From Polymyxa betae A26-41 (taxonomy: Eukaryota > Protista > Endomyxa: Phytomyxea): a DNA stretch of 64,000 nt. The position numbers were made by a program, and so were the translations under genes. The notes under the pieces are model-generated. The model worked only from the letters and a program-made list of their open reading frames with translations, did no database searches and had not been told where the DNA came from. Shown piece by piece: positions 40,001 through 42,979 of the stretch. The stretch is taken from positions 1-64,000 of the forward strand of contig RBZT01000312.1 of the NCBI GenBank assembly GCA_003693705.1. Direction: 5' to 3'. Every line of letters begins with the position of its first letter. Position 1 is the first letter of the stretch.

Positions 40001-40294
40001 CCAGGTAATTCCGTTCAATCGTTGGCATGTTTTCATTTTGCTGAATTCAAACAAGTCTATGCAAAAGGCACAACATTGACGAAACCAGTTCTTGAAATCG
40101 AACTCGGCGGCAATAAGTCCCTCCATGTTGTTTCGATTGACCATCTTCCAACTGTTATTCCCAGGGAAAGCAGCTCTGAATTTTCCCAGGATATTTTACC
40201 TTACTTGTATCATTTATTCGAACCAGAATCCTCGCCGGTATTCAAGAAAGCCGGTTCACTCTTCTCTGAAAAGCTCTCCCAAGTTGTTGTTTAA
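37059..40294 (+). CDS. Bifunctional saccharopine dehydrogenase fusion: N-terminal Lys9-type (glutamate-forming) + C-terminal Lys1-type (lysine-forming), multi-exon
   Basis: N-half: [63 protein letters not shown]-half: [81 protein letters not shown]. No separate ATG for the C-half. Confidence 0.88.
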
Positions 40295-40423
40295 ATCGAT
40301 AAAAATCCAACTTGTTTCATGTCTCAAAACTTGCCTCCAAATTACCATCTTGTTTGTCAAAAAACTGATGCGCAAAACTCGTGTCTTGTTTCCCCAAGCC
40401 CAGCTCCTACGGTACTTCAATAA

Positions 40424-41524
40424 ATGTCGTTTCTTCGCCAAATAATCAAAGACCGGCGTGCTATAGCGCAACGTCACGAACATCAATCAGGTGGTGAAAG
40501 AAATAGGGCCGGTCGATTGTTCCCAAAACGCAAAGTCGACAAGCCATGGCCGCGACCATTTCCATTGGATCCTCGGTTGTTTTCGATGCATACTCGGCAA
40601 ATCGCTCGATGTTTGACAAATGCTGTTTCGTGTCGAGCCTGTGGAGTTACTGTTTATGCGATTGCAGGGACAGTTCCGGATCTGCTTTCAAATCCCTCAA
40701 TTGGATTTTGGACTAAGCGCGTACGAACATTTTGACTTTATCAATGACAGTGTGGTAATCAAAGCGTTCTTAGAAAGACCTGGGCAACAATGCCATCGAT
40801 CGAACCAGAGCACGTAAACGGATGAGAGAGTTGGCGGCGGCCGCTTGTGTTCAATGTGGCCTTCCTGGAGTTCAATACATTTTCCGGCTATCTGGCCCTG
40901 TATTATTCCTCAGCCCTAAAGATATGTACAGCGAAATATGTTATGTAATCAATGTGATGCCTATGATCGTCACCTAACATCTTTTCAAGGCCATGAACAC
41001 TCTTGCTGGAAAACAAATGGCAAGGCATACTGTCTCTAGGCCTCTTCCCGGTTGTTTAACTATCAACGAACTTCGAAGCAGAATCTCAGATTTCGAGTCG
41101 ATTAGTGGAAGCATGGCAGGGCAATACGCCATCAGGTTATTGCATCCATTATATTCAGTGAAGGGAGTGATGAATATATTAACACAGCCTTTATTCGGGA
41201 TCAAACTGGGATGGAAGCTGTCATTCTATTGTGAAACAATTGCAGAATTTGTGCCATCTAGCGAAATCTGACCCGATGATCAAGAAAGCACTGTCAATGA
41301 GAAGCGCAGCCGACTTTCGTGGTACACATGAGGTCAAGAAGCATTGTCAGAAATGTCAGTATCAAAGCCATCTGGTTCGATATTTCATTGGTTAGTCTGT
41401 TGTAGAGCATTGTTCGAACAGGAAGTCATTGATCGTTTCTACAGGGTATTGTTTTCCCAGAGGACATTTGCAGTTTATCCCTGATATCATTCCGATTTTG
41501 TCCAAGTTGCTTACAATCTCATAA
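40424..41524 (+). CDS. rnpA: Bacterial-type RNase P protein (RnpA)-like domain fused to an OSCP/ATP synthase delta N-terminal-like domain; 5 exons, 298 aa
   Basis: Exons 40424-40720, 40774-40944, 40990-41135, 41188-41390, 41445-41524; all GT-AG, introns 45-54 nt, frame preserved. PSIGFWTKRKDLGNNAIDRTRARKRMREL..LPGVQYIF matches the RnpA RNR helix; GQYAISLYSG...RGHLQFIPDII resembles OSCP. Confidence 0.7.
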
Positions 41525-42148
41525 ATTCCTGGCGACATAATTCGTTCTAGCAGGTTGCAGTTTCATATTGCTCATAAAGTCAGCGTATGTCATCGATAAT
41601 CGAAAGACAAGCGGCAGCTCTGTGAATAATCATATCGTTCCATGCGTCGGTGCGGCCAAAAACCTTCCTCTCACATCTTCATAACATCGTAGCTTCATAG
41701 AATCGATCGACCGTTGCAGAACGCTTAAGGCTATCTTGACGGCAACAAACGCTTTGAAACTGAATGTCCAACCTCCAGCATTTACCGAATTGGATCCAGA
41801 GCGTTTAGTGCACGACACTCTTTGACATATTTGCATGATTTAATCTCAGACCGAACTAAAACCATGATCTGCTCTTTCTATACGACATTAGACTGATTAG
41901 AGGCCTAAAAGTTCCATCTGAGAACAGCTACGGAGGTTCCTGTTCTCTGATCTATTTTTCTGAGTTTGAACGGCATTTTCTCGCGTTCATGCTAATTGAT
42001 TTTTCATGATTGTTGCCCAAGTAAGCAATATGCGATGCCATCGGACTCCATTCCTTCATCAGTTTACGATCCCGTTCTATATATTACCTGTTCTGTATAT
42101 CATCGTCGTCGTCCGTGCATTATCAATCAGCTCATCCTGCAATTCAGA

Positions 42149-42979
42149 ATGGCCTGGCAATGTTCCGCTTCGTCCAACGTCCAGCTGCTAAACAACCTTC
42201 GCCATGCCGGCATCATTAAGACCGATCGGGTCTTTCGTGCCATGATGGCCGTCGATCGCGGCGGCTACGTTCCCCGAAACGAAAACGCCTACGACGATTC
42301 CCCTCAGCCGATCGGTTGATGATCTGGTCAGTCGCTTCTAGCTTCTCACCAATCCTCGCAGGCTACAACGCAACAATAAGCGCTCCTCATATGCATGGGC
42401 AAATGCTCGAGCTTCTACAAGGGCATCTGCAGCCCGGGTCGATATCCCTGGATGTCGGCAGCGGCAGTGGTTATCTGACCGCCTGTATGGCCCAACTTGT
42501 CAAACCAGAAGGGAAGGTATTCGGTGTCGAACATATCCCTGAGCTCAACGACCAGGCCCTTCGCAACATCAAGAGAGCTAACTCGGACCTATTTGACGAC
42601 AATGTCGTCGAGCTAGTCGTAGCCGATGGCCGTCAAGGCCTGAAAGCGCACGCTCCTTATGACGCGTAAGTGAGTTTGGGGTTTTGTAGGGTTTAGGGTT
42701 TGACTGCCACAGGATTCATGTGGGCGCGGCCGCCCCTGATGTCCCACAAGAGCTCATTAAGCAATTGAAGAATGGAGGTATGGTCGTTTTAGGTTCCGCG
42801 ATGGCGGATATGACGCCTGGCTAGGGCGGCTGGTGGTTCCGGTCGGATCCAACATCTTCGGCCACGAGCTCATGGTCTTCGATAAAGATCAGAATGGACG
42901 AATCCATTCACAGTCGGTGGCGGCGGTCCGATTCGTACCGCTCACCAGCCGGGAAAGTCAACTTCGTTCCGAGCGCTGA
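42149..42979 (+). CDS. PCMT1: Protein-L-isoaspartate O-methyltransferase, 4 exons
   Basis: MAWQCS, AYDDSPQPIG|YNATISAPHMH, LDVGSGSGYLTAC, DGRQG...APYDA|IHVGAAA, VRFVPLT. Confidence 0.97.

What the first reader, a model, noticed from the sequence alone, without database searches (positions are those of the whole stretch)
40424..41005. Hidden nucleus-encoded bacterial-type RNase P protein (RnpA), probably mitochondrial
Seen: removing introns 40721-40773 and 40945-40989 gives ...FPLDPRLFSMHTRQIARCLTNAVSCRACGVTVYAIAG..LSNPSIGFWTKR|KDLGNNAIDRTRARKRMRELAAAACVQCGLPGVQYIFRLSGPVLFLSPKDMYSEICY|AMNTL. The key exon is absent from the ORF track. Known: RnpA/C5 has FP...RL, an R(I/L)G strand, KKxGxAxxRNRxKRxxRE and LP.xD(F/I)V; these elements occur here in order with similar spacing, with RNR as RTR. 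An Arg-rich N-terminal extension looks like a presequence. To my knowledge nuclear RnpA is rare in eukaryotes (some green algae, jakobids), and I recall plasmodiophorid mtDNAs retaining rnpB (needs verifying). Inference: this is the protein partner of an ancestral bacterial-style mitochondrial RNase P in a lineage where it may be unrecognised.
Basis: partly seen in the sequence, partly recalled or inferred. Interest (0 to 1): 0.88.

Follow-up and report, generated by a model that had tools for sequence, protein, structure and literature searches.

The report
Nuclear RnpA gene of a plasmodiophorid
A spliced, expressed nuclear gene of the sugar-beet root parasite Polymyxa betae encodes a highly diverged bacterial-type RNase P protein (RnpA) with a basic N-terminal extension and an extra OSCP-like helical domain. 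It is most likely the so-far unrecognised protein partner of the RNase P RNA that plasmodiophorid mitochondrial genomes still encode.

Summary
The introns at 40721-40773 and 40945-40989 are real: spliced contigs from two studies skip exactly these stretches. They also skip two further introns, at 41136-41187 and 41391-41444. The gene is therefore longer than the finding: five exons, 40424-41524 (+), 298 codons.

The genome matches the unannotated Polymyxa betae draft (1,001 contigs, 27.09 Mb).

RnpA homology is well supported:
- Exon 2 alone has Pfam Ribonuclease_P as its top hit (E 0.009, below the cut-off).
- An uncharacterised 303-aa Spongospora subterranea protein is a collinear orthologue.
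- The two-species profile matches a bacterial RnpA profile (hhalign 95-97 %, P 3e-8 to 6e-10; about 600 shuffles reach at most 22 against a score of 56).
- The ESM Atlas model of the orthologue superposes on RnpA (TM 0.81, 120 residues).

The C-terminal 110-140 residues resemble the N-terminal domain of ATP synthase OSCP/delta. The evidence is weaker: hhalign 66 %, TM 0.77.

Mitochondrial targeting and partnership with the mitochondrial rnpB RNA are inferred, not shown. [quoted passage not shown]

It is a new lineage and a new domain architecture for a known kind of protein. The P. betae exons were never joined.

The parts
40424..40720 (+). Exon 1 (99 codons). It holds the start ATG, directly preceded by an in-frame TAA. 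Next comes a basic extension of about 45 residues, a putative mitochondrial presequence. It ends with the N-terminal half of the RnpA domain (FPLDPRL... to ...SIGFWTKR).
   Evidence: ORF list and sequence. Collinear with residues 3-98 of the Spongospora orthologue P0001. The 3' boundary is fixed by joint 40720/40774 in contigs of X1 and X4. The extension has net charge +9 over 45 residues. Exon 1 alone gives no Pfam hit.
40721..40773 (+). Intron 1, 53 nt, GT..AG
   Evidence: Skipped in spliced contigs from two studies.
40774..40944 (+). Exon 2 (57 codons). This is the RnpA core: the RNR-motif helix (AIDRTRARKRMRE), then LPGVQYIF (strand beta4), then the start of the last helix.
   Evidence: Pfam PF00825 is the top hit, E 0.0093, 16.4 bits, profile positions 49-99 of 109. 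A local bacterial RnpA HMM gives 17.9 bits, p 1.2e-7. 54-56 % identical to P0001 residues 99-153.
40945..40989 (+). Intron 2, 45 nt, GT..AG
   Evidence: Skipped in spliced contigs from two studies.
40990..41135 (+). Exon 3 (146 nt). It holds the end of the RnpA domain, a poorly conserved linker, and the start of the OSCP-like domain (...SMAGQYAI).
   Evidence: Joints at 40944/40990 and 41135/41188. Weak but collinear alignment to P0001 residues 157-202.
41136..41187 (+). Intron 3, 52 nt, GT..AG. The read alignment leaves the cut ambiguous by 3 nt; the GT..AG rule fixes it.
   Evidence: The split codon AG|C gives Ser, matching Ser in the Spongospora sequence HYALSLYSG.
41188..41390 (+). Exon 4 (203 nt). 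It encodes the main part of the OSCP/delta N-terminal-like helical domain (LYSGSNWDGS...HLVRYFI).
   Evidence: 49 % identical to P0001 residues 203-270. The plasmodiophorid profile against a bacterial delta/OSCP profile gives hhalign 65.9 %, P 5.7e-5, and 0 of 208 shuffles reach that score. The ESM Atlas gives TM 0.77 to an OSCP cluster for the orthologue.
41391..41444 (+). Intron 4, 54 nt, GT..AG
   Evidence: Skipped in spliced contigs from two studies.
41445..41524 (+). Exon 5 (80 nt). It holds the last helix of the OSCP-like domain and the TAA stop at 41522-41524.
   Evidence: The X4 contig ends at 41524. Aligns to P0001 residues 271-293.

Best explanation
This is a single-copy nuclear gene of Polymyxa betae with five exons. 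Its 298-residue product has three parts:

1. A basic N-terminal extension of about 45 residues.
2. A highly diverged but genuine bacterial-type RNase P protein (RnpA/C5) domain.
3. A C-terminal helical domain that resembles the N-terminal domain of ATP synthase subunit OSCP/delta.

**Shown here:** the exon structure, expression and splicing; a collinear orthologue in Spongospora subterranea; RnpA homology by sequence profile and by fold.

**Inferred mechanism:**
- The extension acts as a mitochondrial presequence.
- In the matrix, the RnpA domain binds the bacterial-type RNase P RNA (rnpB) that plasmodiophorid mitochondrial genomes encode.
- As in bacteria, the basic RNR helix contacts the catalytic RNA. 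The protein also helps bind the 5' leader of mitochondrial pre-tRNAs, so that the ribozyme works under physiological ionic conditions.
- Nuclear pre-tRNAs are served by a separate eukaryotic-type RNase P; a nuclear P RNA and Pop4 are present in the same genome.

The role of the OSCP-like domain is unknown. The most likely guess is an added protein- or RNA-binding module for a reduced mitochondrial P RNA.
For: **Transcripts**
- Four GT..AG joints appear in contigs of two studies, giving one open frame from 40424 to 41524.

**Organism**
- 1,001 contigs and 27.09 Mb match the P. betae draft genome.

**Orthologue**
- Spongospora subterranea A0A0H5R2A6 (P0001) is 303 aa, annotated 'uncharacterized', with no precomputed Pfam domain.
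- It is collinear with all five exons.

**RnpA homology**
- Pfam PF00825 is the top hit for exon 2, E 0.0093.
- An HMM built from 68 bacterial rnpA genes found next to rpmH scores exon 2 at 17.9 bits and P0001 at 18.9 bits. None of 5,000 shuffles reaches those scores, and the next best window ORF scores 4.2 bits.
- hhalign gives 96.6 %, P 5.8e-10, score 56, 85 columns. The tool's own run gives 95.2 %, P 2.6e-8, against an alignment whose 38 members all pass PF00825.
- Controls: about 600 shuffles reach at most 22.4; the reversed query scores 11; the OSCP profile scores 12.

**Fold (orthologue, residues 40-165)**
- All 30 nearest ESM Atlas clusters are PF00825.
- The Atlas's own single-sequence model superposes on an RnpA cluster at TM 0.81/0.80 over 120 residues.

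**Motif (E. coli numbering)**
- G48, A59, R62, R64, R70 and E71 are kept in P. betae.

**Context**
- rnpB is annotated in P. brassicae mtDNA (PMC6823432; bioRxiv 10.1101/335406) and reported for S. subterranea mtDNA (PMC7194472).
- This genome holds a nuclear-type P RNA (RF00009, 68.5 bits) and Pop4.
- The N-terminal extension has net charge +9 in P. betae and +8 in Spongospora.
- Plasmodiophorids have no plastid (general knowledge).
Against: - **Pfam cut-off not reached.** Exon 2 scores 16.4 bits against a cut-off of 22.3. The full-length Spongospora protein gives no Pfam RnpA hit at all.
- **Near-invariant RnpA positions are changed.** N63 is T (S in Spongospora). R67 is K (Q in Spongospora). 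In Spongospora A59 is G and E71 is P.
- **Leader-binding aromatics do not align.** The aromatic residues of helix 1 in bacterial RnpA have no aligned aromatic counterpart here, although alignment of that segment is unreliable.
- **No localisation predictor or experiment was available.**
- **The P. betae mitochondrial genome is not in the assembly** (no COX1). rnpB could therefore not be checked in this species, and the blank RF00010 search is uninformative.
- **No P. brassicae orthologue turned up** in the protein searches.
- **The added OSCP-like domain has no precedent in RnpA** and could signal a changed function.
Confidence: 0.62

Rival explanations
1. The domain is a true RnpA descendant, but the protein no longer works in RNase P. 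It has been recruited to another role in mitochondrial RNA metabolism. Alternatively, through its OSCP-like domain, it has become a lineage-specific subunit or assembly factor of another complex such as ATP synthase.
For: - Conserved RNR positions N63 and R67 are substituted, and the helix-1 aromatics are not recognisable.
- The protein is fused to an OSCP-N-terminal-like domain that is conserved in both species.
- A normal OSCP gene exists elsewhere in the genome, on contig C587, so the extra domain is a paralogue free to change.
- No P. brassicae orthologue was found, although that species has rnpB.
Against: - The basic RNR helix, which is the P RNA-binding face, is the best conserved part between the two species and against bacteria.
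- Co-occurrence with mitochondrial rnpB in Spongospora (PMC7194472) leaves that RNA without any other known protein partner.
- The N63 and R67 changes are conservative (T/S and K/Q), with arginines on both sides.
Confidence: 0.24
2. The gene works as an RNase P protein but is not an ancestral mitochondrial inheritance. A plasmodiophorid ancestor acquired it by lateral transfer from a bacterium.
For: - The distribution among eukaryotes is very patchy: prasinophytes and a jakobid (PMC7050145).
- The AU test does not reject grouping the Spongospora domain with Gammaproteobacteria (p 0.49).
- No other rhizarian homologue was found.
Against: - In the best tree the domain sits with the 18 Alphaproteobacteria (SH-aLRT 79). 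Its five nearest rows and its highest identity (29 %) are alphaproteobacterial.
- The extreme divergence and the four spliceosomal introns argue for long residence in the nucleus.
- This rival concerns origin only and is compatible with the proposed function.
Confidence: 0.1
3. There is no RnpA here. An arginine-rich helix in an unrelated protein mimics the RNR motif by chance, or the locus is bacterial contamination.
For: The Pfam score is below the gathering cut-off. Single-sequence searches against solved structures do not find RnpA. AlphaFold2 with only plasmodiophorid rows gave an unusable model, pLDDT 38.
Against: - Composition-preserving controls never approach the observed scores.
- The match spans 85 columns including strands and the last helix, not only the basic helix.
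- An alignment-free fold prediction agrees (TM 0.81).
- Contamination is excluded by four spliceosomal introns, spliced transcripts, flanking eukaryotic genes and a Spongospora orthologue.
Confidence: 0.04

Closest known systems
Bacterial RNase P protein RnpA / C5 (Pfam PF00825; solved structures 1A6F, 1NZ0, 3Q1Q, 6D1R)
   Same: - The order of secondary-structure elements is the same, and the domain is about 115 residues long.
- The R-I-G strand is present.
- The RNR helix keeps A59, R62, R64, R70 and E71.
- The LP..D/Q-hydrophobic strand and the C-terminal helix are present.
- Profile-profile probability is 95-97 %.
- The predicted fold gives TM 0.81.
- An MSA-guided model superposes on solved RnpA structures at about 2.2 A over 95 columns (not independent evidence).
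   Different: - The gene is nuclear, carries introns and is eukaryotic.
- It has a 45-residue basic N-terminal extension.
- N63 is T/S and R67 is K/Q.
- The helix-1 aromatic residues are not recognisable.
- Identity to any bacterial RnpA is only 12-29 %.
- It falls below the Pfam cut-off.
- It carries a C-terminal extra domain of about 110-140 residues that bacterial RnpA lacks.
Nuclear-encoded bacterial-type RnpA of the jakobid Andalucia godoyi (PMC7050145) and of prasinophyte algae (Lai et al. 2011, cited there)
   Same: All are eukaryotic nuclear genes for a highly diverged RnpA, in organisms whose organelle genome keeps a bacterial-type rnpB. Mitochondrial targeting is predicted for Andalucia.
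   Different: - The lineage differs (Rhizaria, Endomyxa, Plasmodiophorida). No paper in the searched library links RnpA with Plasmodiophora.
- The OSCP-like C-terminal domain is not described in the text I read (PMC7050145). I did not see those sequences, so this difference is unverified.
ATP synthase subunit OSCP / delta, N-terminal domain (Pfam PF00213)
   Same: The C-terminal 110-140 residues align collinearly with positions 6-106 of bacterial delta. The G-x-YA-x-x-LY start and the R-G-x-L-x-x-hP-x-I end are both present. The scores are hhalign 65.9 %, P 5.7e-5; Pfam top hit E 0.19; ESM Atlas TM 0.77.
   Different: - Only the N-terminal helical bundle is present. The C-terminal domain that joins OSCP to the peripheral stalk is absent.
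- The match is far below the Pfam cut-off.
- The genome has a normal OSCP gene elsewhere (120.8 bits).
- Here the domain is fused to an RNA-binding protein.
Rpm2p, the protein subunit of yeast mitochondrial RNase P
   Same: Rpm2p is a nuclear-encoded partner of a mitochondrially encoded rnpB RNA, which is the same functional niche (general knowledge).
   Different: Rpm2p is unrelated in sequence and fold to RnpA. The plasmodiophorid protein keeps the bacterial subunit instead of replacing it.

Membership tests
RnpA / Ribonuclease_P (PF00825) | Score above the curated Pfam gathering cut-off (22.3 bits) | tested here: not met
   Exon 2 alone scores 16.4 bits, E 0.0093, and is the top hit. Exon 1 gives no hit. 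The full-length Spongospora orthologue gives no PF00825 hit. The joined P. betae protein was not tested, because the exons were not joined.
RnpA / Ribonuclease_P (PF00825) | Significant profile-level homology over most of the domain | tested here: met
   hhalign 96.6 %, P 5.8e-10, 85 columns. The tool's own run gives 95.2 %, P 2.6e-8. About 600 shuffles reach at most 22.4 against 56. The local HMM gives 17.9 and 18.9 bits, reached by 0 of 5,000 shuffles.
RnpA / Ribonuclease_P (PF00825) | The RnpA alpha-beta sandwich fold (helix, three strands, RNR helix, strand, helix) | tested here: met
   Tested on the Spongospora orthologue only. The ESM Atlas single-sequence model gives TM 0.81/0.80 over 120 residues to an RnpA cluster, and all 30 feature neighbours are PF00825. 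An MSA-guided AlphaFold2 model (pLDDT 82) has solved RnpA structures as its top 15 PDB hits; this is not independent of the alignment. AlphaFold2 without bacterial rows was uninformative.
RnpA / Ribonuclease_P (PF00825) | RNR motif: A59, R62, N63, R64, R67, R70 (invariant or nearly invariant in 38 bacterial sequences) | tested here: inconclusive
   P. betae reads A59, R62, T63, R64, K67, R70. Spongospora reads G59, R62, S63, R64, Q67, R70. The basic character is kept, with extra arginines at positions 66 and 68, but two near-invariant positions are changed.
RnpA / Ribonuclease_P (PF00825) | Aromatic residues of helix 1 and the central cleft that contact the pre-tRNA 5' leader | tested here: inconclusive
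   The FP...RL start is present (FPLDPRL). The local profile alignments begin after helix 1, and no aligned aromatic pair is seen. Alignment of this segment is unreliable.
RnpA / Ribonuclease_P (PF00825) | [quoted passage not shown] | not testable with these tools
   The assembly lacks the mitochondrial genome (no COX1; RF00010 blank). [quoted passage not shown] No binding or activity data exist.
Mitochondrion-targeted protein | Cleavable N-terminal presequence and matrix localisation | not testable with these tools
   Only composition could be checked. The 45-residue extension before the RnpA fold has net charge +9 (P. betae) and +8 (Spongospora), few acidic residues, and a moderate amphipathic moment of 0.44. 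No TargetP or MitoFates was available.
ATP synthase OSCP/delta (PF00213), C-terminal half of the protein | Pfam cut-off (22.3 bits) and full two-domain OSCP architecture | tested here: not met
   12.2 bits, E 0.19, profile positions 3-99 of 172 only. No counterpart of the OSCP C-terminal domain is present. It resembles the N-terminal domain only: hhalign 65.9 % and TM 0.77.

The most novel reading that the evidence does not exclude
Plasmodiophorids run a new architectural variant of the ancestral bacterial-type mitochondrial RNase P. In it, the RnpA subunit is permanently fused to a duplicated OSCP-N-terminal helical bundle. That bundle would do one of two things: stand in for structural elements lost from the reduced mitochondrial P RNA, or dock the enzyme onto another protein by binding an amphipathic N-terminal helix, as OSCP does with the F1 alpha subunits. 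The second option would physically couple tRNA processing to another mitochondrial machine.
Probability: 0.25. Interest if true: 0.8.

Novelty: new variant of a known kind. Interest (0 to 1): 0.6.

Why it matters
**A missing partner.** Mitochondrial rnpB genes are annotated in plasmodiophorids, but no protein partner has been named for them. Nuclear bacterial-type RnpA has so far been reported only from prasinophyte algae and a jakobid (PMC7050145).

**A new lineage.** A plasmodiophorid RnpA would put this ancestral feature in a third, distant eukaryotic lineage (Rhizaria, in SAR). That supports the view that the early mitochondrion used a bacterial two-part RNase P that was lost or replaced many times.

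**Annotation blind spot.** It also shows that such genes escape annotation. The Spongospora protein is 'uncharacterized' and has no Pfam domain on record.

**A testable fusion.** The fusion with an OSCP-like domain is an unexpected architecture. It can be tested directly by reconstitution with and without that domain.

**Practical use.** The gene gives a defined marker for mitochondrial tRNA processing in uncultivable crop parasites: Polymyxa (virus vector) and Spongospora (powdery scab).

Tried and rejected
**Searches that found nothing or were uninformative**
- Pfam and NCBIfam on exon 1 and on exons 3-5 separately gave no meaningful hit.
- phmmer of exons 1 and 2 against solved-structure sequences gave no RnpA hit, only chance hits with E of 0.14 or worse.
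- A search of the window's own genome with PF00825 found no candidate, so that tool's first-look filter misses this divergent, split gene.
- RF00010 in the own genome was blank. This is uninformative because the mitochondrial genome is not in the assembly.
- PF16953 (PRORP) in the own genome was blank, but the family rang in no control genome, so this is no evidence of absence.
- The exhaustive representative search with exon 2 gave only the Spongospora orthologue and one spurious repeat protein, P0002.
- Word-indexed searches with P0001 and with alignment A3 found only P0001 itself.
- An exact-sequence look-up of P0001 in assemblies found nothing on record.
- Two metagenome scans, one with exon-2 patterns and one with exon-4 patterns, found no relative.

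**Structure and alignment problems**
- AlphaFold2 of P0001 with only plasmodiophorid rows gave pLDDT 38, which is unusable.
- MAFFT global alignment of the exon fragments misplaced exon 1. This was replaced by fragment-aware alignment in a script.

**Reads**
- Raw RNA-seq runs X11 and X16 had no read on the stretch, so they are no test.

**Phylogeny**
- The tree could not resolve origin. Placement with Alphaproteobacteria has support 79, and placement with Gammaproteobacteria is not rejected.

- The joined P. betae protein was deliberately not built or searched, under the operators' rule. All P. betae evidence is exon by exon. Full-length tests used the natural Spongospora protein.
Full report
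**Organism.** The window belongs to an assembly of 27,085,814 bases in 1,001 contigs. That matches the published draft genome of Polymyxa betae, which has 1,001 contigs, 27,085,946 bp and 45 % GC and was deposited without gene models (PMC6328671). P. betae is a plasmodiophorid (Rhizaria) that lives in sugar-beet roots. The contigs of that draft were selected by coverage and composition. This explains why no COX1 is found: the mitochondrial genome is not in the assembly.

**Observation.**
- I laid public runs on 40200-42200. Contigs of two runs from different studies (X1 and X4) lack four short GT..AG stretches, so they derive from spliced RNA.
- The introns are 40721-40773 (53 nt), 40945-40989 (45 nt), 41136-41187 (52 nt) and 41391-41444 (54 nt).
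- The X4 contig runs from 40443 to 41524 as a single piece.
- The X1 contig also joins the upstream gene. That may be overlapping untranslated regions or an assembly join, and it does not show a single transcript.
- The five exons sum to 897 nt: 298 codons and a TAA at 41522-41524. The gene therefore extends well beyond the finding's end at 41005.
- The two raw-read RNA runs I added had no read on the stretch and are no test.

**The joined step was left out.** All P. betae evidence below is exon by exon. Full-length tests use a natural orthologue.

**Orthologue.**
- An exhaustive HMMER search of 1.84 billion representatives with exon 2 returned one real hit. P0001 is 303 aa, 56 % identical, with E 1.9e-10. 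The second hit, P0002, is a repeat protein and is spurious.
- P0001 is Spongospora subterranea A0A0H5R2A6, annotated 'Uncharacterized protein' with no Pfam domain on record.
- All five P. betae exons align to it in order. The exon 1/2 boundary falls between its residues 98 and 99. The two codons split by introns 3 and 4 give Ser and Gly, the residues Spongospora has at those positions.
- The gene is single copy in P. betae.

**Is it RnpA?**
- *Pfam.* Exon 2 alone has Pfam Ribonuclease_P (PF00825) as its top hit, E 0.0093 and 16.4 bits, aligned to profile positions 49-99 of 109. This is below the 22.3-bit cut-off. Exon 1 and the full Spongospora protein give no Pfam RnpA hit.
- *An independent profile.* I fetched bacterial loci through the conserved start of rpmH. 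I took the rnpA gene downstream of it in 69 loci and built an HMM from the 68 unambiguous sequences. A 38-member subset all pass PF00825.
- *HMM scores.* This HMM scores exon 2 at 17.9 bits (p 1.2e-7) and the Spongospora domain at 18.9 bits (p 5.5e-8). Both align in the same register, from the strand before R-I-G through the RNR helix to the LPG..Y-I-F strand.
- *HMM controls.* None of 5,000 shuffles of either sequence reaches its score; the maxima are 11.8 and 9.0. Among 570 six-frame open stretches of the window, the exon-2 stretch scores 17.5 and the next best 4.2.
- *Profile against profile.* The two-species alignment, with the exons kept as separate rows, matches the RnpA alignment at 96.6 % probability, P 5.8e-10, score 56, over 85 columns. 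The tool's own hhalign gives 95.2 %, P 2.6e-8.
- *hhalign controls.* About 300 column shuffles and about 300 local-block shuffles reach at most 20.2 and 22.4. The reversed query scores 11.1. The unrelated OSCP profile scores 12.0.

**Fold.**
- AlphaFold2 with only plasmodiophorid rows failed, with pLDDT 38.
- The ESM Atlas holds the Spongospora sequence with its own single-sequence model (pTM 0.67). For residues 40-165, all 30 nearest clusters by language-model features are PF00825. The model superposes on a 'ribonuclease P protein component' cluster at TM 0.81/0.80 over 120 residues. This result does not depend on my alignments.
- An AlphaFold2 model guided by an alignment with bacterial RnpA (pLDDT 82) has solved RnpA structures as its top 15 PDB matches. 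These include 6D1R, 1NZ0, 3Q1Q and 1A6F, at about 2.2 A over 95 columns. I report it as consistent but not independent.

**Motif detail (E. coli numbering).** In 38 bacterial sequences R62, R64 and R67 are invariant, and G48, A59, N63 and R70 are nearly invariant.

| Position | Bacterial RnpA | P. betae | Spongospora |
|---|---|---|---|
| 48 | G | G | G |
| 59 | A | A | G |
| 62 | R | R | R |
| 63 | N | T | S |
| 64 | R | R | R |
| 66 | K (E. coli) | R | R |
| 67 | R | K | Q |
| 70 | R | R | R |
| 71 | E (E. coli) | E | P |

The basic face is kept but not the exact motif. The helix-1 segment (FPLDPRL...) is not covered by the local profile alignments, and no aligned aromatic pair is evident.

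**C-terminal domain.**
- Pfam OSCP is the top hit for P0001 residues 165-303, but at E 0.19.
- A plasmodiophorid profile against 25 bacterial delta subunits gives hhalign 65.9 %, P 5.7e-5. The alignment is collinear over positions 6-106, which is the N-terminal domain. None of 208 shuffles reaches that score.
- The ESM Atlas gives OSCP clusters by features (0.86, a lead only) and TM 0.77/0.63 over 108 residues by structure.
- A normal OSCP gene lies elsewhere in the genome (contig C587, 120.8 bits).
- I regard the OSCP-N-terminal-like fold as likely and the homology as probable, not proven.

**Where and with what does it work?**
- Two independent annotations find rnpB in P. brassicae mtDNA (PMC6823432; bioRxiv 10.1101/335406). 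A review states that both the S. subterranea and the P. brassicae mitogenomes carry rnpB (PMC7194472). In Spongospora, the RNA and this protein therefore co-occur.
- The P. betae nuclear genome has a full-length nuclear-type RNase P RNA (RF00009, 68.5 bits) and Pop4/Rpp29. Nuclear pre-tRNA processing is thus accounted for by a separate enzyme.
- Both orthologues carry about 45 residues before the RnpA fold, with net charge +8 or +9 and few acidic residues. This is consistent with a presequence. I had no targeting predictor.
- Mitochondrial import and partnership with the rnpB RNA are therefore inferences.

**Origin.** In a quick maximum-likelihood tree (120 columns), the Spongospora domain falls on the alphaproteobacterial side. 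SH-aLRT is 79, and the five nearest rows and the best identity (29 %) are alphaproteobacterial. However, its branch is very long, and the AU test does not reject placement with Gammaproteobacteria (p 0.49). The bacterial sample is also biased by how I fetched it. Ancestral mitochondrial origin is compatible with the data but unresolved.

**Comparison with what is known.**
- Nuclear bacterial-type RnpA has been described for prasinophyte algae and for the jakobid Andalucia godoyi, where it is 'highly diverged' and predicted to be mitochondrial (PMC7050145).
- No paper in the searched library mentions RnpA together with Plasmodiophora.
- A 2024 review treats endosymbiont-derived organellar RNase P as confined to its original compartments (PMC10941002).
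- The present gene is a member of the RnpA superfamily by profile and by fold, but it fails the Pfam cut-off and has a modified RNR motif.
- It works, I infer, like the Andalucia case. It differs in lineage and in carrying an extra OSCP-like domain.

**Verdict.**
- I put the probability that the domain is a true RnpA homologue at about 0.93.
- I put the probability that the protein is the mitochondrial RNase P protein subunit at about 0.6.
- Novelty: a new variant of a known kind (new lineage, new fusion).

Noticed in passing
window 41188-41524 (and P0001 residues 185-303): The C-terminal part of the same gene is an OSCP/delta N-terminal-like helical domain that is conserved between Polymyxa and Spongospora. 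A normal OSCP gene exists elsewhere in the genome (G000:C587:43419-44049, minus strand).
   Followed up: yes
window 40200-41971: One spliced contig of run X1 (3,932 nt) runs without a break from the upstream lysine-pathway gene (stop at 40294) through this gene, and continues about 450 nt past its stop codon. This may be overlapping untranslated regions, read-through or an assembly join. In run X4 the two genes are separate contigs with very different depths (212 against 9).
   Followed up: no
window 41996-42669: The downstream neighbour on the + strand is a protein-L-isoaspartate O-methyltransferase gene (PCMT; Pfam E 5.6e-35 for 42316-42666), with at least one short intron near 42300.
   Followed up: partly
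G000:C971:125727-126023 (+): A full-length nuclear-type RNase P RNA (RF00009, 68.5 bits, E 2e-18) lies in the same genome. A Pop4/Rpp29 gene split by a short intron lies at G000:C818:101890-102188.
   Followed up: partly
whole assembly G000: No COX1 match was found anywhere in the assembly, so the mitochondrial genome appears to have been removed during contig selection. Blank searches for organellar genes in this genome mean nothing.
   Followed up: partly
P0002 (519 aa): An unrelated protein made of eight tandem repeats of about 55 residues matched residues 24-55 of exon 2 at E 4e-10. This is a repeat-summed, spurious hit, and a reminder that short queries can collect significant-looking scores from repeats.
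   Followed up: no
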